NCBI RefSeq assembly: GCF_947568905.1
Contig: NC_079170.1
Span: 77,810,001-77,874,000 of the forward strand
DNA from: Ostrea edulis
Lineage: Eukaryota
Length of the DNA stretch: 64,000 bases
Direction: 5' to 3'
This document shows positions 1,727 to 64,000 of the stretch, one piece after another. Under the pieces are notes generated by a model. The model was not told where the DNA came from. It saw only the letters and a list, made by a program, of their open reading frames with translations, and did no database searches. Position numbers and translations under genes: made by a program. Positions within the stretch are counted from its first letter, which is position 1; the number at the start of each line of letters is the position of its first letter.

Positions 1727-1734
1727 GTAAGAAT

Positions 1735-2007
1735 GTAAAACTTATACGGTACCAATTTTGATGCAGCAGATGCGCATTTCGAGAAATAATATCTCTTCAG
1801 TGATGCTCGACCAAAATTTTGGAAATCCGAAATAACAATAAACTTGAAAGAGCTATTTTAAGGAAAGTAAGAGTGCCAAAAATTGCAGTGAAACTCGTGT
1901 AAGCATGACGGAGATAATCCTTCATTTTGAAATGAATTTCTCAATCTTATCACAGCAATTAAATGTACATCCGTATTTTCAAGCTAGTAACGAAGTACTT
2001 AGCTACT
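1735..2007 (-). mobile_element. Truncated ~350-bp hammerhead repeat (retrozyme-like) in FReD-A intron 1
   Basis: Starts GTAAAACTTATACGGTACC 9 nt into the intron; degenerate hammerhead at 1758-1810 (stem I and stem II mismatches). Confidence 0.85.
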
Positions 2008-6424: not shown

Positions 6425-6550
6425 AGATCTAATATCTAAAACTTCATAATTATTTCGAATTTCAAACATTTCGGTTGAGCATCACTGAAGAGACATTATT
6501 TGTCGAAATGCGCATCTGGCGCATCAAAATTGGTACCGTATAAGTTTTAC
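6425..6550 (+). mobile_element. Short hammerhead-repeat fragment, sense to FReD-A pre-mRNA
   Basis: Reverse complement of the 53142 unit start; ends TAAGTTTTAC. Confidence 0.85.
6475..6527 (+). ncRNA. Minimal type I hammerhead ribozyme motif
   Basis: GCATCA-CTGAAGA-GAC attattt GTC-GAA-ATGCGCAT-C-TGGCGC; core intact, one A-C mismatch in stem I; predicted cleavage after 6516. Confidence 0.75.
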
Positions 6551-7116
6551 ATATAGAAAATATAGCATGGAGAAACAAATCGCGGATTCATCTAAAGTTT
6601 ATCATACGCAGGTATCGAGAAGTTGAGCCTGCAGAGCACTGCTATTTCACATGAACTTCATGGGCTCTGAGAAAAATACTGACAAATCAATGCAAGATTG
6701 TTCTTTACGTATTAGATTGCTCACTGCATACTAGCGCCAGACTGCATCACGAACTTATCCAACGTTACGTTCCAACATGTTATTCACGCTCAAAAATGTC
6801 GATCATGTCAACAGTAGTTTCACTCGGACACAACAAAAATGATATATTGTTACTTTTTACCTCTTAATGATTCACTATTTTGATTCTAGTTCATTATGTT
6901 TATAATTCTGATGTTATGGCTGCTTCATATATCCTACATGTACCTAGAACGCCACCGGGTATGTTTGTATAATCTGGTGATGTAAAAATAATTTCATTGT
7001 GTTTTTGTGAAAGAAATTGACTTTAAATTGTCATTAGCATTGTCCATTGTAAAATGAAATATAAGAGAATGATATACATGCATTGATTTCTGGCTACTTC
7101 TATTCTTTACCAAAAG

Positions 7117-10659: not shown

Positions 10660-10673
10660 TATACTTATATTTA

Positions 10674-13650: not shown

Positions 13651-13714
13651 TTAATTTGCTGCCCGATATGAGATGTAATTAACAGATTGATCGACTGGTG
13701 GTGACAATGAAAAT

Positions 13715-30656: not shown

Positions 30657-30998
30657 GTAAGATATAACAGATATAGAAACAATTGCTTTCTCTATCTCCA
30701 TCCTTTCTCTGCCTTTTACGACATACTACTTTTAGGATTATCATAATTTGACATATTATATCATAACAATCTAGTTTGCCAATACAACGTATATCAATTG
30801 TTTGCTTTCAAAACAATGACACCATACGTTGATAAAGATAACTGTATTATCTTTAATGACAAATCAGTTGAAAGAGATTTAATGAACATTTTGTAGGCGC
30901 AGGTATCATAGAGGATGGTAAAACACTTTGACTTAAACTCACATGCCAAAAGTATGTCACCTCCCCCCAAAGATGGCCGCTTATATTTTTGTTTACGT

Positions 30999-31470
30999 GT
31001 AAAACTTATACGGTACCAATTTTGATGCACCAGATGCGCATTTCGACAAATAGTATCACTTCAATGATGCTCAAACCGAAATTATTGGGAATCAAAATAA
31101 CAATTAACTTGTAGGAGCTAAAAGGAAAACTAGAATGCCAAACCAACTAGAGCCAAATTCGTCCAAGGATAAGAGCTATGCATGAGGGAGATATTCCTTA
31201 ATTTTCAAATGAATTTCTAAATTTTGATCGCAGCAATTGAATATACATCCGTAATTTCAAGCTAGTAACGCAGCACTAAGCTACTGGGCTGTAGGGACCC
31301 TCGGGGAATAATAGTCCACCAGCAGAGGCCTCGACCCAGGGGTCATAATGTAAAACTTATACGGTACCAATTTTGATGCACCAGATGCGCATTTCGACAA
31401 ATAATATCTCTTCAGTGATGCTCAAACCGAAAGTTTGGGAAATCGAAATAACAATAAACTTGTAGGAGCT
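30999..31470 (-). mobile_element. 1.3-unit tandem of the hammerhead repeat in PAN-FTL intron 3 (period 351)
   Basis: Units start at 30999 and 31350; motif 31022-31074 has a mutated core (TTGAAGT), motif 31373-31425 is intact. Confidence 0.85.
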
Positions 31471-38692: not shown

Positions 38693-38700
38693 GTAAGAAT

Positions 38701-39421: not shown

Positions 39422-40493
39422 GTAAGTATATGTAAACGGCGTTACGAAGAAATAGACTTGCTGTTGAAGGAGTGGTATCATTTTTATTATACGTGCATAT
39501 TATAACATTCTTTTTTAACATCAGCATGTAGTCAATGAATAGAAAAACAAGAAAGATGAATGAAACAATCAACTATCGCAGAACACTTCTGTGAAAATAT
39601 ATTCAGTATATTGTCATGATCAATGCATACGTAGTCTTATACAAACATGTAGATAGTGCTTGATTTTCATTTTTTCTGGAATTAGACCTCTAAACATTCG
39701 ACACAAATTAAGCACAAACCTTGATTCATTTCAAATGGAGGAATTATTTCTTCCGAATATAGTGTTAACTTTGTATTTCTTTTGTACTTAATACATGAAC
39801 ATACAAAACCGTCCTAACAATCTACATTCTGTTGATCCCCATAATAGCAAAGTTTTAAAAGATTTCAAAGAATTTGTCAATCATTGTTAAGCGAATAATT
39901 GTAAATATCAATACATTTAACAACCATCTGTGATTTTGCATCCACTATGAAAATTGCTTATTTCAACACTTTAACATTTTGTCCTGTCATTATGTTTAGT
40001 TCTTTTCTTGCATAAAATTCAAGGATACTCTTTTCCGTTATCAGATATCTCTGAGAAACATACTGAAAAATCAATGCAAGATTGTTCTTTACGTATTAGA
40101 TTGCTCACTGCATTCTAGCTCCAGACTGCATCACGGAACTTATCCAACGCTACGTCCCAACATGTTATTCACGCTCAAAGATGTCGATCATGTCAACAGC
40201 TACATCCACGCGGACAAAACAATAATGATATATTGTTACTTTTCACCTCTTAATGATACACTATTTTGATTCTAGTTCATTATGTTCATAATTCTGATGT
40301 TATGGTTGCTTCATATATCTTACATATACCTAGAACATACCCGGTGGCGAGTATTTTTTAAAATCTGGTGATGTAAAAGTAATTTCATTGTGTTTTTGTG
40401 AAAGAAATTGGCTTTAAATTGTCATTAGCATTGTCTATTGTAAAATGAAATACAAGAGAATGATATACATGAATTTCTATTCTTTACCAAAAG

Positions 40494-40639
40494 TTCCTGA
40501 AAAGTACAAAGACTGCTCAGAAATTTTGAAAATGAAGCCACACAGGAAAAACAGAGATGGTGTCTATACCATCTACCCCACTGAAGGAAGTAAGATAAAG
40601 GTGTTTTGTGACATGACAACAGACGGAGGCGGGTGGACG
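40494..40639 (+). CDS. FReD-B exon 3 (PEKYKDC..VFCDMTTDGGGWT)
   Basis: Canonical fibrinogen C-domain start; AAG acceptor, ACG|GTAAGT donor. Confidence 0.9.
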
Positions 40640-42788: not shown

Positions 42789-43025
42789 GAAAAACTTATA
42801 CGGTACCAATTTTGCAGCACCAGATGCGCATTTCAACAAATAATGTATCTTCAGTTTATGCTCAACCGAAGTGTTTGAAATCCGAAATAACAATGAAGTT
42901 TTAGAGCTTTTATAGGGAAAAACAGGGTGCCAAAAAGTTGAGTCAAATTCGTCTAAGGATAAGAGCTATGCGTGAGGGAGATAATCCTTAATTTTGAAAT
43001 AAATTTCTAAATTTTATAACAGCAA
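42789..43025 (-). mobile_element. Truncated, degenerate hammerhead repeat
   Basis: Positional equivalent of 9447-10034 but a single partial unit; motif mutated. Confidence 0.8.
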
Positions 43026-43382
43026 TGTATGTGATATTAAATATCATCGTCCTGAATATGTATATTTGTAGTTCATCAGATTTGATCCAATGTCAGCAAA
43101 GATCCAAAATGTTCCATTTGTCCTAATAAATGATGTCTTTCAATTGAATCTTTTCGGCGAATTTTCCCTTCGTCACCTTAGCTATGATTCTCATTTACAA
43201 ATGTGAATTGTTAGGAAAAGGAGCAACCGCTGCCTTAGTTTTGACGCGGTCGTGGTAAGAGCGGTGTTCAGGGGTTCAAACTCATATCTCCCGGATATAA
43301 CGCGAACGTTTTACCACTGTACTACTGGCACATATTATGTATCATTTACTTATTTTTCCTTATTTTTCCATTTATTTTTCAG

Positions 43383-43482
43383 GTGATACAAAGAAGAATG
43401 GATGGAACCACAAATTTTCAAAACAAAAAATGGAAAGATTTTGCGGAAGGATTTGGTCATCCGGATCACGAATATTGGCTTG
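43383..43482 (+). CDS. FReD-B exon 4 (VIQRRMDGTTNFQNKKWKDFAEGFGHPDHEYWLG)
   Basis: QRRxDG and EYWLG fibrinogen motifs; phases 0 and 1. Confidence 0.9.
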
Positions 43483-43706
43483 GTTAATATTTAATTTTTG
43501 TAGAGTGAAAATTATTTTTACATAGTTTAAACAAAGTACTTGAATATGAAAGGTGAAGATAACGAACATTGATCCATCTCATAACTCCTATAAGCAATAC
43601 AAAATAGATAGTTTGGCAAATAAAAGTAGGGGGAATGGAAATGGAATAGAACATTTATTTTAATCACCGTTTCCTCATTTCTGAGATTTTTTCGAAGATA
43701 ATATAC

Positions 43707-43710
<4 letters not shown>

Positions 43711-43757
<47 letters not shown>
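43711..43757. repeat. (AT)n microsatellite
   Basis: Direct. Confidence 0.95.
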
Positions 43758-43759
<2 letters not shown>

Positions 43760-44105
43760 ATTGATTTATAAGTATCGTATATCTATTCGAAAATACTCTT
43801 AAATATTTTGAAATTTTATAACATGTATAAAAAGAAAATATACAGTTTCAATTTTGAGCTGAAATTTCAGAAGTACACCACAGCATAACTTACAAATAAA
43901 AATAGAATATTAAAACTGTTTTGTTTACAAACATGAAATATTAAGAATATGTAATTCATTAAGTTACTGATTGATCACTGTTCGCTATCTTCACCTTTAT
44001 TTAGTTACGTACTTTTGCAACAAAATGTTAGGTAAGATGCATGTCTATATCTTCATACATCAAATATGTTGTTCTTATGTCCTTATGTGTTGAAAATTCT
44101 TTCAG

Positions 44106-44276
44106 GTAACAATGCCGTGCATGATTTAACTAAAAGCGGTAAAATGAAACTAAGAATAGACATGAAGAGGTTCAACGGGGAACAAGGATTTGTACAATAC
44201 TCGACCTTTATTGTCGGAAGTAGATCTGATAAGTACAGGCTGAAAATAACGGGATTCCGGGGATCATTCGGAATGA
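44106..44276 (+). CDS. FReD-B exon 5
   Basis: NNAVHDLTKSGKMKLRIDM..YSTFIVGSRSDKYRLKITGFRGSFGM; 171 nt, phase 1-1. Confidence 0.9.
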
Positions 44277-44777
44277 GTAAGTATTTATTGTTATAGTAAT
44301 TAGTATCACTAGTTCTATAAATTAATGTATATGGTGATTGTCTAAAGAGATATCAAACACAATGTCTATTTATACTATATTCTGCTTATACAGCAAATGG
44401 GCTCTACATAAACGGAACAGGGTTTTTAGTTCTTACAATGAATTACATTCAAATAATCAATAGGGTGTTGCTAAAACGCGGAACGGAAAACAAAACGGAA
44501 GACCGAACGGAAAACGGAAAATATTGTATGCAACAATGCTGTGAGGAGGGCAGCATTTTGCAGAATAAAAACAATTATCATGAAGAAGAGAAGCAGACAT
44601 TACAGAGAAAGTGAAAAGCCATCCACAGAATCCACCGTTTATAACACCCTATAATTTTAATAGGTATACTGGGACAGATTTTCACTTTGACATGGACTGT
44701 AATTCAGAAATTCTGACAGTTGTTTGAAAAGCTGAAAACATTACCCTACGATATTTCAGTGGTAGTCGACCCCCACA

Positions 44778-45030
44778 CCGCCGCGGTGGCCAAGAGGATA
44801 GAGCTTTTGTCCTGCATGCGGAAGGCCAGGGTTCGAATTCCGGCCGCGACAGACCTAAGTCTTTAAAAACATGTTCACTGTAGTGAAAGTTTCATCGTCA
44901 AACGCTCAGCATCAGGTGTAAATGTCACGGGTCCTCGGAGATGACCTTAAAAACGAATGGCGCGTGTCACAGTAGGTATGACACGCTAAATAACCCTCAC
45001 TGCTCAATGGCCATAAGCGCCAAACAAAGG
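44778..45030 (+). mobile_element. tRNA-derived SINE (possibly MetaSINE-like); partial copy at 46681-46848
   Basis: A box GTGGCCAAGAGG and B box GGTTCGAATTCC followed by a body shared between the two copies. Subfamily name is from recall only. Confidence 0.7.
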
Positions 45031-47769
45031 TCTTTTGAATCATATTATAAAATATTATTACACTGTATCATCTCGACAGAATAGAGCAAACAAACAAGTG
45101 TGTTGGCAGTTTTTGTCATGGCTTTACTTATTCTAAAATATAAATGACAGAACAAATTACAATACAATGTATAAATGATAAATGGAAATTCACAATGAGC
45201 AATGAGACATCAATGATTATATTCCATATTATCAATGGCCAAGAACCGTCAATGCTTAACCAATATTCACAATGAAGTCCATCATCAGTAAGCGTTCAAT
45301 ATTCATAGGTCAATGAAGTTCAATGGTAAATGTTCGATATGTTCGTTGTATGATACACATTAAATGATGATCAATGGATTTTACACACAATGGTCTACAT
45401 CGACTTTTCCAATAGTGTATGATGTAGAAACAATGAAAATAGCACAATGGCGGAAGCCCAAATTATTGGTCAGAGACTGGAAAATTAGCAGAATCGGCGG
45501 CAGGGCTTCCAGCAAAATTCGGCCATATGTCTGAAGGCGTCAGATCCCATTATCTGATGCATGAAGACATCCGCCACAAGCGGGCATATTTTGCCCATGC
45601 CATGGCAAAACTGCACTACTGAGGTAAAGATGGATAAATTGGAAATTTTCACACAAACCTTCTTGTATACCAATCAAAAATACAGTTTGGGCAATATCAG
45701 AGAGATGGGTACCATCTGGGTATAACTTACGGGTACAGTTTTGTAAGTCAGGGTAATTAATGTAGCCACCATTTCTAGAGATCATGAAATTGGACATGAA
45801 ACTGTTTATCCTAACCCTTGCTTTTTCGGCTGCGATGTGCGAAAACATGTGCCGATAATATTTCCGTGGTAAGATTTGAGACCAAATGATTCTACATCTA
45901 GGTAACATAGAATGGATATTAGCAAGTGTTAATTTCATAATTTTTTGAAGATGACGCAATGACACGGTACCAATACTATTTACCCCACATTATAACACTG
46001 ACATCCGGATAGCCAAACTGTCGAACAACTTCACGTAACCGACGCTTTACATCTTCCCAAAGCATGCTTCTCTAGCCAAACCATCTTACGAAAATGTTTT
46101 GGGACTGAAGATGTACATGTATATGTTGGTTTGAATAATTCGCAAATGTATGCTGGTGGGCGTATTGCATTAAAGTTGAACCCACTATCCAAACTGTAAT
46201 ACCGGTACCTGCAAACTCAGCATACTGTTAGCAAACAGTTTAAATGTTGCAAGGTATTTTATACCCGAAGATAAGATTGAACAGCATTGGATTTCCAACA
46301 ACCTTTATCCTTAATTTCGTCTTCGAGTACGCCTCTAAGAACAAATGTGTGGCCCCACCTATTTGAAATGAATGAGATTCAAAAGTACCAGTGTCCGGGC
46401 CAATAAAGGACAAGGTACGGTTTTAGCCAAAATCTGCCCGGCGTTTATGGAGGAAAATTATTTTGCGTTGCAGATATTTTCCTGTCAAATTCCTAAAAGA
46501 GTGATTTATAGTATCTCTCAAAAGCATATGGAAATCAACTCATCTACGCGCATGCGTAGTACATAATCAAATAAAGTAAGGGCTTTCAGGTTATTTGTGG
46601 TGTTTTCATGGTTTTTGTATTGATAAACTTGTGAAATTGAACACCTCTTCCCTCTTTTAAGCACACTATCTATAAATATTCGCCCCGCATGCGGAAGGTC
46701 CGGGGTTCGAATCCCGGCCGCGACAGACCGAAGTCGTTAAAACAGGTAATGACAGTTTCATCGCCAAAATGCTCGGCATCAAGTGTGAATGTTACGGGTC
46801 CTTGTAGATGACCCTAACACCGGATGACCGGTGTCACAATGTGGCACTGGGGGTCTTCAGTGTTCTACTATATCTGCAATGGTTGCAAAACTATTTAGTT
46901 GTTTGGGGAACACTAATTCACTTTCATTTTTGAAAACAATACAAAACAAAAAAAGTTTGTGTAGCTAAGATAGGGATTAATATACATTTCTTGCAAGGCA
47001 CTTTTTACTAAGGAATATATGTTACTCATTAAAATTATTTTTAAATTGAGGTGCCTGAAAGATAATTTGCTCCATATGTGTTACTCGTATTACTATATGT
47101 ATTTTAATTTACAATGATTGAAATAGATTATAGGCGCATAGATCGGGGTTTTTTTAAAAGGGGGGTGACTTCTCAAAACATTGACAAACACAAAAATAGG
47201 GATTTTGGTATCATTGGAGTGGGTTGATTACATGTATCCAATGTATCAATTACAAATACATTTCATCTATCTTTCTCTACTACTATAAAATGCAGTCCGG
47301 GGGAGGGGGGTTACACAAAGCGAATACACAACATATGGATAGATCTATATATAGATATAATATTGAGACTCGCAGTATTGAGCATTCCGTCAAAATTTTG
47401 TTTTTCTCCATTCGAGATAAATATACGATGTATGTATATACTTGCATAATCAGAAAATGCAGTTTAGATTTTAATGGTTTTCTTTTATCATGGGGCAGGG
47501 GTTGGTTAGCAAGTCTTAAGTTTTATTTCTCTTGTATAAACTATCGAATGATTTTTGTATTTTACAACTTTTAAGAGGGTTTCTTTGAGCAAAAGTGGAT
47601 ACGATGACACTAAATTGCGCAAACCAAGTGTTGGGGTGTACAAGCTTTGTGTCGCTCAGTTGTACAGTACCGAACACATTGACGATTTTTTGTGAAGAAA
47701 CCTGATAGTGGTGAGTGAGAATGTGTTTGAATATGTGCATGAGAGACGGTCTGTTTGAGGCATGGTATA

Positions 47770-47774
<5 letters not shown>

Positions 47775-47820
<46 letters not shown>
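47775..47820. repeat. (GA)n microsatellite
   Basis: Direct. Confidence 0.95.
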
Positions 47821-47825
<5 letters not shown>

Positions 47826-47926
47826 ACTTAAAAAGTTTTCATGTTTTGTTTGTTTATTTTACGTCCTTTCGAGAACTTTTCTCTCAAATTGAGAAATCAT
47901 CAGCTGTATGTGAAGTACCACATATA

Positions 47927-48268
47927 CCCTGGGTCGAGGCCTCTGCTGGTGGACTGTTAGTCCCCGAGGGTCTCTACAGCCCAGTTGCTAAGTACTTCGT
48001 TACTAGCTTGAAAATACGGATGTATATTTAATTGCTGTTATAAAATTTAGAAATTCATTTCAAAATGAAGGATTATCTCCCTCATGCATAGCTCTTATCC
48101 TTGGACGAATTTGGCTCCACTTGTTTGGCACGCTGTTTTTGGCTATATTTAGCTCTAAAACTTCATAGTTATCTCGGATTTCAACATTTTGGTTGAGCAT
48201 CACTGAGGAGACATTATTTGTCGAAATGCGCATCTGGTGCATCAAAATTGGTACCGTATAAGTTTTAC
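47927..48268 (+). mobile_element. Near-full monomer of the hammerhead repeat, sense to FReD-B pre-mRNA
   Basis: Reverse complement of the 53142 unit. Confidence 0.9.
48193..48245 (+). ncRNA. Minimal type I hammerhead ribozyme, all elements intact
   Basis: GCATCA-CTGAGGA-GAC attattt GTC-GAA-ATGCGCAT-C|TGGTGC; predicted cleavage after 48234. Confidence 0.85.
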
Positions 48269-48417
48269 ATATAAAACCTATGATTAGCACTTAAGGCTAT
48301 AGCATTGATTTTTTTTAACGTGCCAATACCTGTTGTGACACAGGACCTCCTTTTTTAAGGTCACGAAAAGCTGAAGGTATCGAATAGTGATGAATTCGAA
48401 TTTGCGTAATTTCTATA

Positions 48418-48490
48418 AAGAATACAAAATAAAGAGTAGGGCAAACACGGACCCCTGGACACAGTCGAGGTGGCATCAGGTGCCTATCTG
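48418..48490 (-). mobile_element. Internal fragment of a Penelope-like tail
   Basis: AATACAAAATAAAGAGTAGGGCAAACACGGACCCCTGG. Confidence 0.7.
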
Positions 48491-50501
48491 AAAGACCCGT
48501 GATTCTCACTTTTGTCGAGCGTTTGTCGAAGAGCACATGCATGTCTACCTCTCAGGTTCGACGTGGCATGTCATGAGCGGGGTTCGAACACACAATACCT
48601 CCCGGTTACGAAGCGAATGCCCTACCACTGATAACCGTAACCGTTTCATAGTTATCTTCCCTTTGAAGTTGTGTTTCTAGTTTCTCAGAAACACTGAGTT
48701 TTTTCCTGAGTATACCTATGAAATGACATTTTGCTCCAACTTAATACCACGCATATAATATTGAGAATATACATATATGGAATATTGCGTATGCCAATTA
48801 AAAACAAATACCGATGAATTCTATTGTGTTCCGATTCGTGAAAAATTACATTGGTGATAACCCAAACTTCGCATAAAATTCAGTGATTTGAATTTGAGCT
48901 GCCTTTGATGTCATCATTTTTTTCCGAATGCACGCGAGACTCTAACAAATATAAAAAAAAAATCTTAAAATTCGCCACAATAAAGGAAGTTGGAGACAGA
49001 AATAAGAAATCACTGTTACCAGCATATAAATGTTTCTTTAATTAATTTGGTGTTCAAACCATTATATTTCTACACCAGAAAAGCTTTCCGCGAATACCTG
49101 CAGTTTTTGCCCCTGTGCGGCATATCTGATGTGGTTTCAATTTCCATTTAATACCCATTCAAATCAGTACAAAAACCAATAATTTCGCATTTATTAAGAA
49201 TTAATAGTTCTATGTGTGATACAGTTTTTATTTCCTACTCAAAACATCGCTTGGGAAGAACTCGTATATTACGTCAAAATTAACGTCAAATTTGGTGACG
49301 TCGTCAGGTTAATATAAAGTTTTCCGTTGAATATATTACAGCTACTATTGTAGATAAAGAATAACAATGCTCATTTACATAAATGGCACATTCTCAAATA
49401 CCAGATTTAGTATTTTGGTGAATTTCCTTGACAGGGCAGATTTTGGCTAAAACCGTACCTTGTCCTTTAGTTGACATGTGGAGTACCGCCGTAAAATGAT
49501 ATGATGTTAGAGGTTTTGAATTGAGGTGGCAAAAGAATGGGCCTTGAACATGTGGTCTGATTGATAAGAATTTATGTAAGTGGGGCAAATAAAGTGGATG
49601 TTTGTTGAGTAGTATTTGAATTGTGGCGCCTTTGCGAGGTTGAACAGTTTTGAACCCCGCAAATATGAACTTGATAGCTTATGCCACTCATGTAACATCT
49701 AGCAGGTAAATATATTTAATTTGCTGCCCGATATGCGATGTAATTAAAAAAATGATGGAATGGTGGTGGCAATGAAAATTTGTTACGAAATATGCTAAGC
49801 GAGTGAAACGTTTTCTTTTGTGAAATCTGTAAAGGAAGCGATCATTGCGCATGGTCAAGATGATGATGTTGCGGAGATTGACGATGATCGACGATGGGCA
49901 TTGCACTAATCAAGGACATGGGAGTTGTCTATCTTGAGCACATAATTGTTCTAGTCGTTCTCAATAACGGGACTTAACTGGTATTGAGTTAAGTCTGATT
50001 ATGTGTAAATTTACATGTGAATGCGCGTTAATGACGTTTTGCCACCCGGGGGAGGGCATGTAAATACCTGTGTTCTTTCCATTCTCTACCCATAGGTGTC
50101 GTTACTCGCGAACACATCTGTCAATGCCGACATTTAAATATTCTTGTAAAACGCATTGTAATTTCTTAAACAGACGCGTAACTTCAATTTATCAAGCAGA
50201 ATTTTAAGATAAAATTGATCTACAGCTCGTAAACAAATTCCTACAAATTTAGATTTTAATCATAATAAAGTATTTTCTTCCGATTTTGGTGTTTTCTTAG
50301 TTAAATTAATCATTTTAATCCTTAAATCCTTAAATTTTGTTTCGTTTTCCATTCCGCTCCGTCTTCCTTTCCGTTTTCCATTCAGCGTTTTAGCAACACC
50401 CTTATCAATACGTACTGGCGTAACAAAATAATTTCGGTTATCACTTTGTCGGCATATTGCCATTGCACCACTTGTTACTTAATGTACTTATTTATTCACA
50501 G

Positions 50502-50755
50502 AGGATTCCCTTGCTTATCATAATGGGATGCAATTCTCCACAATAGACAACGATAACGACCGGTGGAAAAATAACTGTGCCACAACGTATGGAAATGGAT
50601 GGTGGTTCAACGTCTGTCATCATAGTAATCTTAATGGTATATACTATAGAAAACCAACATCCGGTGGTAAAGGAATGAAGTGGTATTTCTGGGGTCACAA
50701 AAGCACAAATGAACCTTTGAAATATACAATGATGATGATTAAGCCAAAGGCGTAA
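50502..50755 (+). CDS. FReD-B exon 6 (DSLAYHNGMQFSTIDNDND..NCA..GWWFNVCHHSNLNG..WYFWG..MMIKPKA*)
   Basis: Intact fibrinogen P-subdomain motifs; CACAG acceptor; AATAAA at 50779-50784. Confidence 0.92.
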
Positions 50756-51615
50756 TGTAATTGGACATGTTCCTGATCAATAAATTCTTAGAACTTGATT
50801 GGTTATTCATATTCAACTATATCATTAATTTGATACGTTATCTCAACTTACATATAGTACACTACAAGTAACAGAATTGTTTTAGAAAGCGTTTTATTCC
50901 ATACGATTTTTGTATCTAATATGACATTTAGTGTTTTCATAATGTAAAAATTATAGCCTTTCCATTCTTCTCACAGTTCTGCCAATTCACTCTTTGCCAA
51001 TCGGAACCACGATATACGTTTTTCAAAAGAAAGGATATATTGTTTTAATTCATGGAAATAACCAATTAGTTCACACCTTAATGTAGAGGACGCACCAACA
51101 GGACTGAGGTTACACGACCAGTCTACGTCATAAATTATCTCTTTAAATTTTCTTGTTTACCGTTATTGGTAGCCTTGTGGTGAAGGCTTTCTCTGCCCAA
51201 CAGGGGAGTTCCAGGTTCGATTCTTGATCCCGACTCCGCGTCTAACTCACGACATTTAACGTAGGTAGCAACATTTCCAAAACCAGGCGTCCAGCTTAAC
51301 AATTGACAATCACGGTTTTGTTAACACGGAGATTCCTATTACAATATGCGTTAGGACAATAAAGAACGCTGACTGCTACCTCGACGACAGTTTACATTAA
51401 CGCTGACAACCTCTTTACATAATTACATAATTGCCAAAATTTCCAAAGGAAACAACATACAAACAAAAATAGAAAGAAGGATTAAATAAACTTGTTAACA
51501 CTTGCAAAAATTATTTTGAGTATATTGAACTTGAAAAAAAAAACATAACAGGCACGTAGTAAAGAAAAAGTATGACGATGTGAAAACTACTGCAGAACTT
51601 CAAAAATGATAATAA

Positions 51616-52230
51616 GAGGTGAAGATCACGAACAGTGATCAATCTCATAACTCCTATAAGCAATACAAAATAAATAGTCGGGCAAACACGGACCCCTGGA
51701 CACACCAGAGGTGGGATCAGGTGCCTAGGATGAGTAAGCATTCCCTGTCGACCGGTCACACCCGCCGTGAGCCCTATATCCTGATCAGGTAAACGGAGTT
51801 ATCCGTAGTCAATATCAGTGTGCCAAGAACGGTATGAAACAGGTCAGATAGCATTTGACCCAATGATAGGTTGCATTGACAAACTAGATCGTTATAACGA
51901 CCATAGAATTTGCGAAATGCTGACTTCAATCGAGACTGTTGAAACCATTGTACCATCAACTTGTTTGTCAGTAGCTTACCTCGAATTAAAAACTGACCAT
52001 ACGCAGAACAAGCTCTTACGTATCGAATCAGTTAAGAGATATAAACACCATATGCAGGTGATAATGGAATTTTGCTATATAAATATAGGAAGTTGACGAT
52101 AGAGAAGCTGAAATCATCCCGTTTGTCATACAGTTAAGTTGTCATTTTGCTGTTAATATCTACTTTCAATAAAATATCTAAGTATGAAGCAGAAGTAGAC
52201 GACTCTGTGGTGTCTTTTATTTCGAGCTAA
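51616..52230 (-). mobile_element. Penelope-like RT C-terminus plus 3' tail
   Basis: FQQSRLKSAFRKFYGRYNDLVCQ on the minus strand; paralog of 15721-16345. Confidence 0.85.
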
Positions 52231-52472
52231 CATTGTAGTAAAGAGTAATCATCGTGAAAATTGATTAATTATACAAATATATGAAGTATATGTTGTAAAC
52301 GTGACGGTTAATGTTGTAATAGTCCAAATAGTGGAATGTAAATATCCCATAAAATTGGCATGATCAGCACCTATTTCAGAGATAAAGCGGTTTTGAAATT
52401 CGATCATGATTAGGGTAAAACAAATTAATGACTAGGGTAAAGTAAACTTGATCAATTCACTGACTAGGGTAA

Positions 52473-52475
<3 letters not shown>

Positions 52476-52522
<47 letters not shown>
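52476..52522. repeat. (AT)n microsatellite
   Basis: Direct. Confidence 0.95.
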
Positions 52523-52524: not shown

Positions 52525-53164
52525 ACTTAGTAAATTAGTAAAATGTTGAATTAATTGGTTTTTTCAAGGTTTATCCCAAATGTGTTACTTTTGTATTAAT
52601 CTTTGGAACAATCGGGTATCGAACCCGGGACCTATGCATTACAAGTTAGGTGCTACCCAGGCCGATATAAACTATATGGTAATGATACTGCAATATAGAA
52701 TTTAAACCTATTTCGGAGATCATACAGACTATTCATACTGAGAAAACAATTTTAGAGAAAATGTAGGAAACGTTTGGAATGTCTTTAAACATCACGAAAA
52801 TTTAATTCTCTGTGTCCGCAATTTTTAAGTGAACACAGTGGCAAACTCAAGCAGAATTTTAATAATGATTAGGGATGTACTCTACATCGTCATAATGGCT
52901 GACTTCCTTTAAAAACATGGAAGAAAAAATTAATATTATGAACATCTGACTTTTCCTTTTCAATTTAAATACCTATCCCAGTAGCTCAGTAAGTTATGAT
53001 ACCGATTGGTGAATTGTAGATCGCAGGTTCGAATCGAGCAGGGGTTTTAATATTTTTTCAGAATATCTTCTACTAAAACTGTATTTTTTGACAAAATACA
53101 GTAAATTTGAAAATTTTCAACTTGAAAATATTGTTGTACATGTAAAACTTATACGGTACCAATT

Positions 53165-53217
53165 TTGATGCACCAGATGCGCATTTCGACAAATAATGTC
53201 TCTTCAGTGATGCTCAA
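53165..53217 (-). ncRNA. Minimal type I hammerhead ribozyme (unit 1)
   Basis: Minus strand UUGAGCAUCA-CUGAAGA-GACauuauuuGUC-GAA-AUGCGCAU-C|UGGUGCAUCAA; cleavage between 53176 and 53175. Confidence 0.88.
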
Positions 53218-53514
53218 CCGAAATGTTTGAAATCCGAAATAACTATGAAGTTTTAGATCTAAATATAGCCAAAAACAGCGTGCCAAACAAGTGGAGCCAA
53301 ATTCGTCCAAGGATAAGAGCTATGCATGAGGGAGATAATCCTTCATTTTGAAATGAATTTCTAAATTTTATAACAGCAATTAAATATACATCCGTATTTT
53401 CAAGATAGTAACGAAGTACTTAGCTACTGGGCTGTAGAGACCCTCGGGGACTAACAGTCCACCAGCAGAGGTCTCGACCCAGGGGTCATAATGTAAACTT
53501 ATACGGTACCAATT

Positions 53515-53567
53515 TTGATGCACCAGATGCGCATTTCGATAAACAATGTCTCTTCAGTGATGCTCAA
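53515..53567 (-). ncRNA. Minimal hammerhead ribozyme (unit 2)
   Basis: Core intact; stem II third pair C-A mismatch. Confidence 0.75.
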
Positions 53568-53865
53568 CAGAAATGTTTGAAATCCGAAATAACTATGAAG
53601 TTTTAGATCTAAATATAGCCAAAAACAGCGTGCCAAACAAGTGGAACCAAATTCGTCCAAGGATAAGAGCTATGCATGAGGGAGATAATCCTTCATTTTG
53701 AAATGAATTTCTACATTTTATAACAGCAATTAAATATACATCCGTATTTTCAAGCTAATAACGAAGTACTTAGCTACTGGGCTGTAGAGACCCTCGGGGA
53801 CTAACAGTCCACCAGCAGAGGTCTCGACCCAGGGGTCATAATGTAAAACTTATACGGTACCAATT

Positions 53866-53918
53866 TTGATGCACCAGATGCGCATTTCGACAAATGATGT
53901 CTCTTCAGTGATGCTCAA
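53866..53918 (-). ncRNA. Minimal hammerhead ribozyme (unit 3)
   Basis: All stems and core intact; only a loop II change. Confidence 0.88.
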
Positions 53919-54216
53919 CCGAAATGTTTGAAATCCGAAATAACTATGAAGTTTTAGATCTAAATATAGCCAAAAACAGCGTGCCAAACAAGTGGAGCCA
54001 AATTCGTCCAAGGATAAGAGCTATGCATGAGGGAGATAATCCTTCATTTTGAAATGAATTTCTAAATTTTATAACAGCAATTAAATATACATCCGTATTT
54101 TCAAGCTAATAACGAAGTACTTAGCTACTGGGCTGTAGAGACCCTCGGGGACTAACAGTCCACCAGCAGAGGTCTCGACCCAGGGGTCATAATGTAAAAC
54201 TTATACGGTACCAATT

Positions 54217-54269
54217 TTGATGCACCAGATGCACATTTCGATAAACAATGTCTCTTCAGTGATGCTCAA
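54217..54269 (-). ncRNA. Minimal hammerhead ribozyme (unit 4)
   Basis: Core intact; helix III variant AUGUGCAU stays self-complementary via G-U; stem II mismatch. Confidence 0.7.
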
Positions 54270-56507
54270 CCGAAATATTTGAAATCGAAAACAACTATGA
54301 AGTTTTAGATCTAAATGTAGCTAAAAACAGCGTGCCAAAACATCAAAACATCAAAATCAAATTTCTCTGGTGTAGCATACCTCCATAAACAAACTGATTC
54401 TGGAAACAGTGTATAGTTGATTTGGATGGGTCAAATGTATATTTTTTCGAACATATACATATCAATGTATCATGAAAGATTAATACATTTGAACTTGAAT
54501 TGTCTTAAAGTGTGAAACAGAATCAAAGAAAAACTGTCAATTGATGAAAACGAGGATGGAGAGCGTTTTGCAAAAACGAGTAGAGTGTTAGAATAGAGGA
54601 GGGGATGACTTTAGAGCTCCTCTGAAAATAATTCTTCGCCATCCTCTTGACGTGCGTTATCCGTTTCTACGGGAGTAAGAAAAAATCTTGAAAGGGACGT
54701 TAATCAATATAGAATCAATTACTCAATCTAAATACTATACGATATTCCGATACCAGTCACCTTCTGATATGTTGTATACAGGATGTCCCCATGGGTGTTT
54801 TAAAGTGACTGTGTCATTTGATGAAGACTAAAGTAAAGGTAATGGTACAAATACAGAGTGATACGATCCTCAACTTTACATGAATGGTGAGATTCTACGC
54901 CTTCCTCAAACCAGAACACACTACTTGGTGGTTAACAGAATCCTCCTTCAGGGTACTTGCTTCGCCGGGTTGAACAACCATACAGCTTTTATCGGATCCA
55001 TTGACAACTGAATTGGGCACTGTTGCAAACTTACATAAACAGGAATCCGTTTTTGCCCAACTCTTAATTTTCCATTCTTTATAGGACTTATGAAATTACG
55101 GTTCTTTACTTTTTTGCAATAATTAGTTTTAAAAACAAAAACAATGTTGATAAAAGTTTCGTCAGCTAGAACCAGTGCATATTTCGCACGTAACCTATCT
55201 AATTATTTCGACTTCTTTCTTGGTTATTAAACACAAAAGGATAGATGGTATGCGGTTTTTGTTTTAGTGTTTTGTGATTCGATATTCCTCTTCTACAGTT
55301 TATCCATTCCGAAAAAGTATGTTAACGAGATATGACTTCAGAAAAGACAGACGTTAGAGTAGTAGGAGTTTTCTTTTTAACGTCAAAAATTCATTGGGCT
55401 CACACGTACCCTCGAATTTTCTCTGACCTAACCTTCAGCGTGTGTTACCTGACTAACTTTCAAATACCTTAATTCTTAAAAATGCCGTGCAATATGAATG
55501 TTGGAAGATTGCTTTAGTTTGGAGATTAGAGAGTACTAAGGTTTTAGAACTTGGTCTCAGAAAGAATCGGATTTTCTATTAAAAGGAAATTTTGAATTTT
55601 GTCAAACATACTAATTTTGTATTAACTTTAGAATACACAACGTATGCGCAACACATAGGACACACATGTTAATCGGGCCAAAAATGATGAACATGTATTG
55701 ATAAGCATCTGGGTTATGTTTTGACGTATTCGTGGAGTTCATTAACTAGAATTTATACACGAAATGTTGTGTGAACCATCGTTGTTTACAGCTGACCAAT
55801 ATCTTGCGCGAACATTACTACATGGAAGTGCTATTTGTGTTTCATGGTTGTATCATACACAAACGGGGATGAACGATAACACATAAATGGCGATGAATGT
55901 TAGTTTCCTTTTATTTGTACTACTCAACCACATAACACGGGAGGGATAGTGCATATATTCTTATCTATAACCGGAAAGTATAGCGTGAGAGATTTTTTTT
56001 CCCTTCAGAATGAATTGATATCCGTTATGTGAGCGAGTTTGTGTCCTTGTAAAATTTGATTACATAGTTGCATGTTGAGAAAGTTATCGAAATTCTGTGT
56101 TATATTCTTACGAATGAGATGGGTTGTTCTTAATGCTACAATAATATTATATCAGTTTACATGATTTCAACTTATAGTTAGTCTAGTGTTTGGTAAGCTT
56201 ATTGCATGAAGTAAAGAACTATGGAAAGCCAAAGGGTTCAATATTCTATCTTTGTAATTATGTATTTGTTGTTCCTAAATGCGCCATCGGTTCAATGTAA
56301 ATAGAAAAATGTCAATCGTTATCTTCACATTTGTAGTGCATAACGGTATATTCGTCATTTGAATTGCGTAAGATGTAAATGGAATATATGTTTGTGTAGA
56401 TGCGTAACAAGTGAATGCATTATTTATTTAATGTAAATTTGAAATTGGATCTTCGTCATCCGTAGTTGAGCATTTGCACATTGTAGTTTGTAAAGCCTAT
56501 GCGAGTT

Positions 56508-61081: not shown

Positions 61082-61334
61082 CATGAATTCGCTATAAGCG
61101 TGAATTCTTTATAAACAATAATTCGTTATAAGCGTAAATTCGCTATAAGCGTGAATTCAATATAAACCTGGATTTTTTTATAAGCGTGAATTTGTTATAA
61201 GCGTGAATTTGTTATAGGCGTGAATTCATTATAAGCGTGAATTCGTTATAAGCGTGAATTTGTCATAAGCGTGAATTTGTTATAAGCATAAATTCGTTAT
61301 AAATATCAATTCGTTATAAGCATGGATTTGTTAT

Positions 61335-62684
61335 TGGAGTAAAGGACTTATCGTAAAACTAGCAAAAAAGGGAGACCTCCAAATGTGTGATAACTGGAGA
61401 GGAATAACATTGCTCTCAGTCCCCAGTAAGGTATTCTGCAAAATACTTCTCAGCAGAATAGATGAAGCTATTGATGATAAATTGAGAGAAGAACAAGCTG
61501 GGTTCAGAAGAGGAAGAGGCTGCATAGACCAGATGTTTGCCATTCGTAATATTATCGAACAATGTATTGAATGGAAAATGCCACTATACATCAACTATAT
61601 TGACTTTAAGAAGGCATTTGACAGTGTGCATAGGGATACATTGTGGAAAATAGTTATATCATATGGAATCCCAATGAAGATCTGTAACCTTATGCGAGCA
61701 TTCTACCAAAACTTTGAATGCAGTGTCATATTAGAAAAGAACATCTCTGAGTCCTTTAGTGTCAAATCTGGAGTTAGACAAGGATGTATATTGTCACCTA
61801 TCCTCTTCTTAATTGTCATTGATTGGATCCAAAGAAACAGCACAGCAGATAAGAAGAGAGGTATCCATTGGACTCTGTTCAGCAACCTAGAGGACCTAGA
61901 CCTTGCAGACGACCTGGCAGAGATCTCAGGGAACAAGACCCATCTACAAGAAAAAACAGATCAGCTGAACAAATTTGCCAAACAAACTGGTCTTAACATC
62001 AACACCAAAAAGACCAAGATGATGACAATAAATACTCCAGTGGAACCTGTGGTTTTAAATGGAGAACCGCTAGAGGAGGTAGAGAACTTCACCTACCTAG
62101 GAAGCATACTTAGCAAGGACAACGGTGCCGGGAAAGACATAAAGGCAAGACTCAACAAAGCACGTGCAGCATTCGCCCAACTCCAAACCATCTGGAAATC
62201 AAACAGCTACAGTCTGAGGACCAAAGTCCAACTTTATAACAGCAATGTGAAATCAGTCCTCCTGTATGGGTCTGAATGCTGGCGTGTTATAGACAGTGAT
62301 ATGAGAAAAATTGAGGCCTTCCACAACAGCTGCCTTAGAAAAATAAACAGAATCTTTTGGCCAAACAAAATCAGTAATAAAAACCTACACCAAAAGTGCA
62401 AAAGCAAGAACATCAGCACAGAGATTAAACAAAGAAGAATGAGATGGCTTGGTCACGTAATGAGAATGCCCCAGAACAGGATTCCCAAAGTAGCTCTACA
62501 CTGGACACCACCTGGAAAGAGGAAAAGAGGCAGACCACGTACCACCTGGAGGAGAATCGTAACATCAGAACTAGAGGAAATGGGCTACTCATGGGGACAG
62601 GCACAGTATATTGCCAAGGACAGAGGTAGATATAGACAACTTGTTGAAGCCTTATGTCCCACCGGGGACGAAGAGGATAAGTAA
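61335..62684 (+). CDS. RTE reverse transcriptase, open from the truncation point to the stop (450 codons; no endonuclease)
   Basis: The frame of ORF 61383..62684 extends 16 codons upstream (WSKGLIVKLAKKGDLQ) to the TSD; the stop lies in the TAAG tail. Confidence 0.9.
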   Translation, partial: WSKGLIVKLAKKGDLQMCDNWRGITLLSVPSKVFCKILLSRIDEAIDDKLREEQAGFRRGRGCIDQMFAIRNIIEQCIEWKMPLYINYIDFKKAFDSVHRDTLWKIVISYGIPMKICNLMRAFYQNFECSVILEKNISESFSVKSGVRQGCILSPILFLIVIDWIQRNSTADKKRGIHWTLFSNLEDLDLADDLAEISGNKTHLQEKTDQLNKFAKQTGLNINTKKTKMMTINTPVEPVVLNGEPLEEVENFTYLGSILSKDNGAGKDIKARLNKARAAFAQLQTIWKSNSYSLRTKVQLYNSNVKSVLLYGSECWRVIDSDMRKIEAFHNSCLRKINRIFWPNKISNKNLHQKCKSKNISTEIKQRRMRWLGHVMRMPQNRIPKVALHWTPPGKRKRGRPRTTWRRIVTSELEEMGYSWGQAQYIAKDRGRYRQLVEALCPTGDEEDK

Positions 62685-62691: not shown

Positions 62692-64000
62692 ATGGATTTG
62701 TTATAAGCGTGAATTTGTTATAAGCATGAATTCGTTATAGGCATGAATGTGTTATAAGCGTGAATTTGTTATAAGTGTGAATTCGTTATAAGCGTGAATT
62801 TGTTATAAGTGTGAATTCGTTATAAGCGTGAATTTGTTATAAACGTGAATTTGTTATAAGTGTGAATTTGTTATAAGCGTGAATTTGTTATAATCGTGAA
62901 TTTGTTATAAGCGTGAATTCGTTATAAGCGTGAATTTGTTATAAGCGTGAATTCGTTATAAGTGTGAATTTGTTATAAGTGTGAATTTGTTATAAGCATG
63001 AATTCGTTATAGGCATGAATTTGTTATAAGCGTGAATTTGTTATAAACGTGAATTTGTTATAAGCGTCAATTCGTTATAAGCGTCAATTCGTTATAAGCA
63101 TGAATGTGTTATAAGCGTGAATTTGTTATAAACGTGAATTTGTTATAAGCGTGAATTTGTTATAAGCGTCAATTCGTTATAAGCGTGAATTCGTTATAAG
63201 CATGAATGTGTTATAAGCGTGAATTTGTTATAAGCGTGAATTCGTTATAAGCGTGAATTTGTTATAAGCGTGAATTCGTTATAAGTGTGAATTTGTTATA
63301 AGTGTGAATTTGTTATAAGCATGAATTCGTTATAGGCATGAATTTGTTATAAGCGTGAATTTGTTATAAACGTGAATTTGTTATAAGCGTCAATTCGTTA
63401 TAAGCGTCAATTCGTTATAAGCATGAATGTGTTATAAGCGTGAATTTGTTATAAACGTGAATTTGTTATAAGCGTGAATTTGTTATAAGCGTCAATTCGT
63501 TATAAGCGTGAATTTGTTATAAGCATGAATGTGTTATAAGCGTGAATTTGTTATAAGCGTGAATTCGTTATAAGCGTGAATTTGTTATAAGCGTGAATTC
63601 GTTATAAGTGTGAATTCGTTATAAGCGTGAATTTGTTATAATCGTGAATTTGTTATAAGTGTGAATTCGTTATAAGCGTGAATTCGTTATAAGCATGAAT
63701 TCGTTATCAGCATAAATGTGTTATAAGCGTGAATTTGTTATAAGCGTGAATTCGTTATAAGCGTGAATTTGTTATAAGCGTGAATTTGTTATAAGTGTGA
63801 ATTCGTTATAAGCGTGAATTCGTTATAAGCGTGAATTTGTTATAAGCGTGAATTCGTTATAAGCGTGAATTTGTTATAAACGTGAATTTGTTATAAGTGT
63901 GAATTCGTTATAAGCGTGAATTTGTTATAAACGTGAATTCGTTACGCAGTTGTGTTAAGTAGGGCCATAGAAATATGTCGGAAAAAAAGCATTAATAAAC

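What the first reader, a model, noticed from the sequence alone, without database searches (positions are those of the whole stretch)
53142..54340. Tandem ~350-nt non-coding units each carrying a minimal, dimer-type hammerhead ribozyme (non-LTR retrozyme / circRNA-like system)
Seen: on the minus strand every unit reads GCAUCA-CUGAAGA-GAC(7)GUC-GAA-AUGCGCAU-C|UGGUGC. This gives the full hammerhead core (CUGANGA, GAAA, AUC triplet), a 3-bp stem II, a 6-bp stem I extendable to 10 bp, and a helix III that is a perfect 8-nt palindrome. Predicted cleavage sites at 53176, 53526, 53877 and 54228 are 350-351 nt apart. Known: minimal type I hammerheads with palindromic helix III occur in Penelope-like pseudo-LTRs and metazoan non-LTR retrozymes, cleave mainly as dimers, and can yield monomeric linear and circular RNAs. 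Inference: transcription through this array would release ~350-nt monomers that circularise and are retro-copied as multimers. Whether this particular family is already described cannot be checked here.
Basis: partly seen in the sequence, partly recalled or inferred. Interest (0 to 1): 0.9.

Follow-up and report, generated by a model that had tools for sequence, protein, structure and literature searches.

The report
Oyster hammerhead retrozyme tandem array
This is a 1.2-kb, 3.4-unit copy of a very abundant non-coding mobile repeat of the flat-oyster genome whose 351-base unit carries a self-cutting hammerhead RNA motif; it belongs to a kind of element (animal "retrozymes") described in mussels in 2020, so it is real but ordinary.

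Summary
Window 53140-54339 (minus strand) is a 351-nt tandem array of 3.4 units at 97% identity. It carries four type I hammerhead motifs, with predicted cleavage after 53176, 53526, 53877 and 54228. The motif aligns end to end with Rfam Hammerhead_1 (31.2 bits, E 1e-6, just under the 34-bit cut-off).

The array is one insertion of a dispersed family. The genome holds 7,512 exact copies of the 32-nt ribozyme core. Nearly all inserts end 36 nt past the cleavage site and start anywhere in the unit, which is the mark of 5'-truncated reverse transcription. A young autonomous Penelope-like element (PLE) in the same genome shows the same layout.

A 75%-identical homologue from another organism keeps the ribozyme core and stems unchanged, and also keeps a GC-rich hairpin domain.

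Self-cleavage, circular RNA and mobilisation by a Penelope-like element are inferred, not shown. Only assembled RNA contigs were available, and they were not decisive.

The kind is known: mussel retrozymes (PMC7229834) and the palindromic helix III / dimer model (PMC4209133). This scan has already reported the same family many times elsewhere in this genome. Verdict: new member of a known kind, low interest.

The parts
53140..54339 (-). Whole insertion. In element orientation it reads: 5'-truncated unit (unit positions 240-351), three full units, then a 36-nt tail.
   Evidence: TRF; BLAST of the unit against the window
54228..54339 (-). 5'-truncated unit A (unit positions 240-351). It differs from the other units at 8-10 of 112 positions.
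53877..54227 (-). Full unit B (351 nt)
53526..53876 (-). Full unit C (351 nt). It was used as the query throughout.
53176..53525 (-). Full unit D (350 nt)
53140..53175 (-). 36-nt tail, equal to unit positions 1-36. It supplies the 3' strand of stem I for the last ribozyme and ends at the family's fixed 3' end (...AAGTTTTACAT).
53170..53213 (-). Hammerhead 1, consensus sequence. Predicted cleavage between 53176 and 53175.
   Evidence: Rfam RF00163, 31.2 bits, E 1.3e-6; pattern match
53520..53563 (-). Hammerhead 2. Stem II is weakened (GAC/AUC). Predicted cleavage between 53526 and 53525.
53871..53914 (-). Hammerhead 3, intact apart from one change in loop 2. Predicted cleavage between 53877 and 53876.
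54222..54265 (-). Hammerhead 4. Stem II is weakened and helix III reads AUGUGCAU. Predicted cleavage between 54228 and 54227.
53750..53834 (-). GC-rich hairpin domain of unit C (about unit positions 43-127). The same domain lies 351 nt to either side, in units B and D.
   Evidence: MFE -34.2 kcal/mol, z -2.96. 86% identical to the foreign homologue against 59% for the AT-rich part. Two compensatory pairs, not significant.
52996..53139 (+). Left part of the host repeat that the array interrupts: a tRNA-derived, SINE-like repeat with A-box-like and B-box-like motifs.
   Evidence: At least 1,147 candidate loci in the genome. Contigs of other copies bridge 53140 to 54357. The tRNA-like head was read.
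54357..54440 (+). Right part of the interrupted host repeat.
   Evidence: Joints and high depth
9445..10034 (-). Another insertion of the same family, with two hammerheads. Its paralogue in the segmental duplication is 42787-43026 and has exactly one unit fewer.
30998..31465 (-). Another, older insertion (about 86% identity).
47927..48270 (+). Another insertion (unit positions 43-351 plus the tail).
6434..6552 (+). Another short insertion (unit positions 269-351 plus the tail).
1732..2007 (-). Older subfamily insertion (unit positions 99-351 plus the tail). Its paralogue is 38698-38954.

Best explanation
The array is one insertion of a non-autonomous, non-coding retroelement of the flat-oyster genome, an animal non-LTR retrozyme with a 351-nt unit.

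Each unit encodes, on the window's minus strand, a type I hammerhead ribozyme. Its helix III is only 2 bp closed by the palindromic loop GCGC.

Proposed mechanism (inferred):
1. A transcript running through two or more units lets neighbouring ribozymes pair their palindromic helix III into an 8-bp helix, forming a double hammerhead.
2. Cleavage occurs after ...GCGCAUC and releases 350/351-nt monomers.
3. A host RNA ligase circularises the monomers.
4. The reverse transcriptase of a Penelope-like element starts at a fixed point 36 nt 3' of the cleavage site and copies round the circle, or along a multimer.
5. The resulting insertions consist of a tail, n whole units and a randomly truncated 5' unit.

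Shown here: the motif, the insert anatomy, the copy number, the parallel anatomy of autonomous Penelope-like elements in the same genome, and selective conservation of the ribozyme across lineages.

Inferred: cleavage, circularisation, the identity of the reverse transcriptase, and whether this particular locus is transcribed.
For: Motif. Four hits lie 350-351 nt apart, with 0 expected by chance. Rfam Hammerhead_1 aligns end to end at E 1.3e-6.

Dimer proneness. The monomeric hammerhead fold scores -5.6 kcal/mol against an MFE of -14.3 for a competing hairpin that buries the cleavage site. The monomer helix III is destabilising: -8.7 kcal/mol without it, -5.6 with it.

Family.
- The genome has 7,512 exact matches to the 32-nt core and 0 to the reversed control.
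- There are at least 1,380-2,140 candidate loci.
- About 45 of 48 sampled inserts end at unit position 36 +/- a few, while 5' starts range from 1 to 323.
- Flanks are unrelated to each other.

Insertion at this locus. The array interrupts a high-copy SINE-like repeat. Contigs of other copies of that repeat join 53140 to 54357 with about 21 nt in between.

Penelope-like element (PLE) parallel. A young 3,717-nt PLE (787-aa ORF with GIY-YIG, copies 99-100% identical) shows the same anatomy: a 5'-truncated unit, a full unit, then a fixed tail of 49 or 97 nt past its own hammerhead. That hammerhead also has a palindromic helix III (AGCGCU).

Constraint. The homologue on contig L071 comes from another organism. 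Its unit is at most 79% identical to any copy in this genome, and its flanks are absent from this genome. It keeps the core and all three stems identical and changes only loop 2. Its GC-rich domain is 86% identical against 59% for the AT-rich part.

Literature. PMC7229834: mussel retrozymes of 350-390 bp that accumulate as abundant circRNA, with tandem cDNA made from a primed circle. PMC4209133: palindromic helix III and dimers. PMC8557442: the 30-40-bp tail, pseudo-LTRs and inverted copies of PLEs. bioRxiv 10.64898/2026.07.22.740005: retrozymes as non-autonomous PLE derivatives.
Against: - No direct RNA evidence. Only assembled contigs were available. An RNA-library contig (377 nt, 53841-54217) crosses a cleavage site, but other contigs in the same run carry genomic flanks. 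DNA carry-over or read-through transcripts therefore explain it equally well.
- The Rfam score is 2.8 bits under the gathering cut-off.
- Two of the four ribozymes in this array have a weakened stem II.
- The whole 351-nt RNA folds no better than shuffled sequence (z -0.48).
- No Penelope-like element sharing sequence with the unit was found among 40 PLE loci. The only hits were retrozyme copies beside them (L037, L063) and a fragment in L058, a number that chance would give.
- Units within arrays differ by 1.7-3%, and unit A here by about 9%. The units were therefore not all identical at insertion, or the array has been reshaped since.
Confidence: 0.82

Rival explanations
1. The array is an ordinary satellite-like tandem repeat. 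The hammerhead motif is a fossil, and the unit number arose by unequal crossing-over. No RNA life cycle is active now.
For: The two copies of a 16-kb segmental duplication carry the same insertion, with 2 versus 1 hammerhead units (9445-10034 versus 42787-43026). Unit number therefore does change at the DNA level after insertion. Within the young family the ribozyme is only mildly less variable than the AT-rich part (1.28% versus 1.99%, p = 0.02), as expected for copies that are mostly decaying neutrally. No decisive RNA evidence was found.
Against: Thousands of dispersed inserts share a fixed 3' end and variable 5' truncation, which cannot arise by DNA-level amplification. Copies are about 97% identical, so they are young. 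The ribozyme is unchanged in a 75%-identical foreign lineage.
Confidence: 0.1
2. The units are solo pseudo-LTR fragments of an autonomous Penelope-like element, not a separate non-autonomous element.
For: Penelope-like elements in this genome carry hammerheads with a palindromic helix III in their terminal repeats, and they insert with the same tail and truncation pattern.
Against: In every insert longer than one unit, position 351 is followed directly by position 1 of the next unit and never by an ORF. BLAST of the unit against 40 PLE loci found no PLE containing it. The unit has stop codons in all frames.
Confidence: 0.05
3. The element is a SINE-type repeat mobilised by a LINE reverse transcriptase, and the ribozyme has no role.
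For: 5' truncation with a fixed 3' end is also the LINE/SINE signature. The window contains an RVT_1 ORF at 61383-62684.
Against: There is no poly(A) or microsatellite tail. Head-to-tail multimers with a short terminal redundancy are typical of Penelope-like elements, not of LINE-driven SINEs (PMC8557442). The same anatomy is seen in this genome's own PLE.
Confidence: 0.03

Closest known systems
Non-LTR retrozymes of the mussel Mytilus galloprovincialis (Cervera & de la Pena 2020, PMC7229834)
   Same: Both are bivalve elements. Both have tandem units of about 350-390 bp, each with a type I hammerhead lacking the classic loop 1/loop 2 contacts. Both are low in GC (39% here), non-coding, present in thousands of copies, and coexist with Penelope-like elements.
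   Different: The species and the sequence family differ. Sequence homology to the mussel clones (GenBank MN642551-MN642576) could not be tested here. CircRNA is shown for the mussel and not for this oyster family.
Metazoan type I hammerheads, Rfam RF00163 (newt satellite 2, Schistosoma Sm-alpha)
   Same: The core is the same: CUGANGA...GAAA...UH. Helix I has 6 bp. Helix III is short and palindromic, and the Rfam model draws it as 4 bp with no loop. Full-length alignment over model positions 1-45.
   Different: The score of 31.2 bits is just below the 34-bit gathering score. Stem II has 3 bp with a 7-nt loop.
Hammerheads in the pseudo-LTRs of Penelope-like elements (Cervera & de la Pena 2014, PMC4209133; Craig et al. 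2021, PMC8557442)
   Same: Both have a palindromic helix III and a dimer model. Both insert as partial tandems, with a short tail beyond the repeat and with inverted 5'-truncated copies.
   Different: This element has no RT/GIY-YIG ORF. Its hammerhead keeps a helix III, unlike the min-HHR of many PLEs.
Plant LTR retrozymes (PMC4918200)
   Same: Both are non-autonomous retroelements whose hammerheads delimit an RNA proposed to circularise.
   Different: [quoted passage not shown] None of these is present here.

Membership tests
Hammerhead ribozyme type I (Rfam RF00163) | Conserved core: C3-U4-G5-A6-N7-G8-A9, G12-A13-A14, the A15.1-U16.1 pair, and H17 before the cleavage site | tested here: met
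   CUGAAGA...GAAA...AU...AUC| is present in all four units
Hammerhead ribozyme type I (Rfam RF00163) | Three helices with helix I open (type I topology) | tested here: met
   Helix I has 6 bp (+4 across a bulged A). Helix II has 3 bp (2 bp in two of the units). Helix III has 2 bp plus a GCGC loop, or 8 bp between two copies.
Hammerhead ribozyme type I (Rfam RF00163) | Score at or above the Rfam gathering threshold (34 bits) | tested here: not met
   31.2 bits, E 1.3e-6, full-length alignment. No hit in the gathering-threshold scan.
Hammerhead ribozyme type I (Rfam RF00163) | Mg2+-dependent self-cleavage | not testable with these tools
   Needs in vitro transcription of one-unit and two-unit constructs.
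Animal non-LTR retrozyme (PMC7229834) | Short tandem units (about 170-400 nt), each with a type I hammerhead, low GC, no ORF, no LTR/PBS/PPT | tested here: met
   351-nt unit; GC 39%; stop codons in all frames; units join head to tail with no LTR.
Animal non-LTR retrozyme (PMC7229834) | Dispersed, multi-copy, with signatures of retrotransposition | tested here: met
   7,512 exact ribozyme cores; fixed 3' end with variable 5' truncation; this copy interrupts another repeat.
Animal non-LTR retrozyme (PMC7229834) | Expressed as unit-length linear and circular RNA | tested here: inconclusive
   The element is present in contigs of RNA libraries, but together with genomic flanks. There were no raw reads, so no ends, strand or junction counts.
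Animal non-LTR retrozyme (PMC7229834) | Coexistence with autonomous Penelope-like elements that carry hammerheads | tested here: met
   At least 1,102 GIY-YIG candidate loci. A young 3,717-nt PLE has a hammerhead-like motif and the same insert anatomy.
Autonomous Penelope-like element | ORF encoding a reverse transcriptase plus a GIY-YIG endonuclease | tested here: not met
   The unit has no ORF longer than 56 codons.
Viroid-like / HDV-like replicating circular RNA | Ribozymes in both polarities and no DNA copy in the host genome | tested here: not met
   The hammerhead is on one strand only. Thousands of genomic DNA copies exist.
Plant LTR retrozyme | [quoted passage not shown] | tested here: not met
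   Type I topology and no LTRs.

The most novel reading that the evidence does not exclude
Besides the ribozyme, the family may carry a second selected RNA module and a defined reverse-transcription start.

- Second module: a GC-rich two-hairpin domain at unit positions 43-127. It is locally stable (z -2.96), 86% conserved in a foreign lineage against 59% for the rest, and shows two compensatory pairs.
- Defined start: a fixed point 36 nt 3' of the cleavage site, mirrored by the 49/97-nt tails of this genome's autonomous Penelope-like element.

If both hold, the ribozyme-proximal tail would be the entry site of the PLE reverse transcriptase on a circular template. The GC-rich domain would be a protein-binding or stability element. 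The competing hairpin AUGCGC/GUGCAU would be the switch that keeps circles uncut. That would give a concrete, testable model for a step that PMC7229834 leaves open.
Probability: 0.2. Interest if true: 0.5.

Novelty: new member of a known kind. Interest (0 to 1): 0.25.

Why it matters
The finding adds a well-delimited oyster family to the animal retrozymes: a 351-nt unit, at least 7,500 intact ribozyme cores and a fixed 36-nt tail. Within one genome, the non-autonomous element and an autonomous Penelope-like element share the same insertion anatomy, which supports the proposed dependence of one on the other. A four-ribozyme array such as this one is a candidate source locus for unit-length RNA. 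The finding does not change what is known about the kind.

Tried and rejected
- Rfam at gathering threshold on the whole window and at E<=10 on 1.7 kb gave no hammerhead hit. Only the 91-nt search passed the filters.
- The whole 351-nt RNA folds no better than shuffles on either strand (z -0.48 and -1.15). There is no evidence for a viroid-like rod.
- My own circular-fold script with a shuffle control timed out.
- Autonomous partner: BLAST of the unit against 40 GIY-YIG/PLE loci found only retrozyme copies lying beside PLEs (L037, L063) and a fragment (L058), about as many as chance would give.
- The idea that the 5'-most partial unit generally comes from a different template was rejected. Partial versus next unit differ by 3.05%; full versus full over the same region differ by 2.72%.
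- The alternating variants at unit positions 333/337 hinted at a 702-nt higher-order repeat. Only two linked polymorphic sites support this, so I dropped it.
- Pol III A-box and B-box look-alikes occur in the GC-rich domain. Their order is wrong, and the A-box spacing is lost in L071 while the hairpin is kept. I dropped this idea.
- Covariation in the GC-rich domain gave 2 compensatory pairs, but 57 of 500 shuffles do as well. This is not significant with 5 sequences.
- An endless ORF on a 351-nt (3 x 117) circle was rejected, because every frame has stops.
- The scan of viral contigs for the ribozyme found nothing.
- RNA libraries: contigs only, with no ends, strand or circular junctions. In the one clear RNA run the element shows no obvious excess over the flanking SINE, but contig depth cannot be used to rank.
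The empty-site evidence comes from the contig joints.
- No consistent target-site duplication or target motif was found. Only 0-5-nt matches were seen by eye.
Full report
**What is there**

Window 53140-54339 is a head-to-tail array with a 351-nt period, 3.4 copies and 97% matches. Read on the minus strand, each unit contains GCAUCA-CUGAAGA-GAC(N7)GUC-GAA-AUGCGCAU-C|UGGUGC.

A pattern for the core plus helix III hits the minus strand at 53176, 53526, 53877 and 54228. The spacing is 350, 351 and 351 nt. The window holds 11 hits in all, against none in 100 dinucleotide shuffles.

The units at 53526 and 54228 have AUC instead of GUC, which leaves stem II with 2 bp and a C.A mismatch. The unit at 54228 also has AUGUGCAU in helix III.

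Stem I is 6 bp and extends to 10 bp across one bulged A. The unit is non-coding, with 4-9 stops per unit in every frame. It has 39% GC overall, with a 53% GC block at positions 37-135.

**Is it a hammerhead?**

Rfam at gathering threshold found nothing in the window, and an E<=10 scan of 1.7 kb also missed it. A scan restricted to 53150-53240 returned Hammerhead_1 (RF00163) aligned over the whole model, positions 1-45. The score was 31.2 bits and E 1.3e-6, against a gathering score of 34.

The Rfam consensus itself draws helix III as four pairs with no loop, which is the palindromic arrangement seen here. So this is the ordinary metazoan type I architecture and not an exotic minimal variant. 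PMC4209133 describes that architecture as follows. Helix I has 6 bp. Helix III has 1-2 bp and is capped by a 2-4-nt palindromic loop. The motif is inefficient as a monomer and active as a dimer when two copies lie in tandem.

Thermodynamic prediction agrees with that description:
- The monomeric hammerhead fold scores -5.6 kcal/mol. Its own helix III is destabilising, since the fold scores -8.7 kcal/mol without it.
- The minimum-energy fold of the same 68 nt scores -14.3 kcal/mol. It uses a competing hairpin, AUGCGC/GUGCAU, that places the cleavage site in its loop.

Catalysis itself cannot be tested with these tools.

**It is a mobile family, not a local satellite**

The 351-nt unit has full-length matches of 96-98% identity on all ten chromosomes, with 1,380 first-look candidates of which only 40 were scored. 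The 32-nt ribozyme core occurs exactly 7,512 times in the genome, 3,856 forward and 3,656 reverse. The reversed control occurs 0 times.

I sampled 48 inserts: 30 fetched loci plus the window. About 45 of them end at unit position 36 (35-42), that is, 36 nt past the cleavage site at ...AAGTTTTACAT. Their 5' ends fall anywhere from position 1 to 323. Longer inserts are always a partial unit, then n whole units, then the 36-nt tail. The flanks share no motif and show at most 0-5-nt duplications. This is the signature of reverse transcription from a fixed 3' start with random 5' truncation.

Among the first 100 listed core matches, about 8 loci have two cores 348-353 nt apart and none has three. 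The four-ribozyme array studied here is therefore unusually long.

The window holds nine inserts. Two pairs of them are paralogues inside a 16-kb segmental duplication (1-16596 versus 35431-52478), so seven are independent insertions.

**This copy is an insertion**

The flanks of the array (about 52996-53139 and 54357-54440) belong to a plus-strand, tRNA-derived SINE-like repeat with at least 1,147 candidate loci. In the laid runs, contigs from other copies of that repeat join 53140 to 54357. They carry about 21 other letters where this locus has the 1.2-kb array (tables 5, 5c and 7).

**Link to Penelope-like elements (PLEs)**

The genome holds at least 1,102 GIY-YIG candidate loci. One young family has a 3,717-nt unit, a 787-aa ORF and copies 99-100% identical. 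It carries a hammerhead-like motif: CUGAGGA...GAAA-GCGC-UU|GCGUUA, with the palindromic helix III AGCGCU.

This family inserts with the same anatomy as the 351-nt repeat. There is a 5'-truncated unit, then a full unit, then a fixed tail of 49 or 97 nt past its own cleavage site, and the inserts often form head-to-head pairs. That matches the pseudo-LTR, 30-40-bp tail and inverted-copy description of PLEs in PMC8557442.

The 351-nt element thus behaves like a PLE without an ORF. This agrees with the proposals in PMC7229834 and in the 2026 preprint 10.64898/2026.07.22.740005. I did not find a PLE that shares sequence with the unit among 40 PLE loci, so the partner is unnamed.

**Selective conservation**

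A scan of metagenome contigs for the ribozyme found two foreign contigs. L071 carries a partial unit, a full unit and a tail of a 75%-identical homologue. Its unit matches nothing in this genome above 79%, and its 2.3-kb flank is absent from this genome, so it comes from another organism.

Between the two lineages the hammerhead core and all three stems are identical, and only loop 2 differs. The GC-rich domain (positions 37-135) is 86% identical, while the AT-rich part (136-300) is 59% identical.

The GC-rich domain folds into two hairpins at -34.2 kcal/mol, with z -2.96 and 2 of 200 shuffles as good. It shows two compensatory pairs, G-C to U-A and U-A to C-G, but with five sequences this is not significant: 57 of 500 shuffles do as well.

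Within the young oyster family the ribozyme is only mildly less variable than the AT-rich part, 1.28% against 1.99%, p = 0.02. That is what one expects if most copies decay neutrally after insertion.

**RNA evidence**

Only Logan contigs were on offer. In one small RNA library a 377-nt contig (53841-54217) runs across a predicted cleavage site. Other contigs in that run continue into unrelated genomic flanks, so read-through transcripts or DNA carry-over explain it as well as circles do. No ends, strand or junction counts can be read from contigs. Expression is therefore unproven here.

**How the array got its size**

Units B, C and D differ from each other at 4-8 positions. The partial unit A differs from them at 8-10 of 112 positions. 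Across arrays, neighbouring units differ by 1.7-3%, and the 5' partial unit is not systematically more divergent.

The duplicated pair 9445-10034 and 42787-43026 differs by exactly one unit. Unit number therefore also changes at the DNA level after insertion. Both multimeric cDNA and later unequal exchange may have contributed here.

**Comparison with what is known, and verdict**

The element meets the sequence-level criteria of an animal non-LTR retrozyme as defined for coral, mussel and axolotl (PMC7229834). The mussel units are 350-390 bp and accumulate as circRNA. No paper in the searchable library describes the flat-oyster family.

This scan's own notes already report the same 351-nt family at many other places in this genome, and I reach the same classification independently.

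The finding is real, well supported at the DNA level, and a new member of a known kind.

Noticed in passing
window 1-16596 vs 35431-52478: A segmental duplication of about 16 kb (87-94% identical, with indels) carries two shared retrozyme insertions. One pair differs by exactly one 351-nt unit, so array length changes after insertion.
   Followed up: partly
window 61383-62684 (+), flanked by 61084-61334 and 62696-63944: A 433-aa ORF with RVT_1 (E 5e-32) and DUF6451 sits between two arrays of a 17-bp tandem repeat (15 and 73 copies). It is probably a fragment of a non-LTR retrotransposon. It has no GIY-YIG domain, so it is not obviously a Penelope-like element.
   Followed up: partly
window 52996-53139 and 54357-54440 (+): A tRNA-derived SINE-like repeat with at least 1,147 candidate loci in the genome. 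Its head has A-box-like (TAGCTCAGT) and B-box-like (GGTTCGAATCG) motifs. ARAGORN does not call it a tRNA.
   Followed up: partly
L061 (G000:C1:110499000-110508999), also L062, L064-L066: A very young Penelope-like element: 3,717-nt unit, 787-aa ORF, copies 99-100% identical, in tandem and head-to-head arrangements. Its hammerhead-like motif has a non-canonical stem II (UUAUAAAAU with no G10.1-C11.1 pair) and fixed tails of 49 or 97 nt.
   Followed up: partly
L041 and L070 (minus strand, about 469 and 6247): Other GIY-YIG/PLE loci carry a different small hammerhead: CUGAAGA-GGC...GCC-GAAA-GCGC-UA|ACAG. Its helix III is also palindromic.
   Followed up: no
L071 766-1198; L072 17-95: Marine-metagenome contigs carry a homologous retrozyme about 75% identical, from an organism other than the window's. 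Their flanks are absent from this genome.
   Followed up: partly
window 20693-21175: A 32-bp tandem repeat, 15 copies, 98% identical.
   Followed up: no
window 44780-44851 (+): A tRNA-Ala (TGC) gene inside the second copy of the segmental duplication.
   Followed up: no
window 53160-53227 (-): The predicted minimum-energy fold of the ribozyme region is a competing hairpin (AUGCGC/GUGCAU) with the cleavage site in its loop. It could keep monomers or circles uncut. This is a prediction only.
   Followed up: partly
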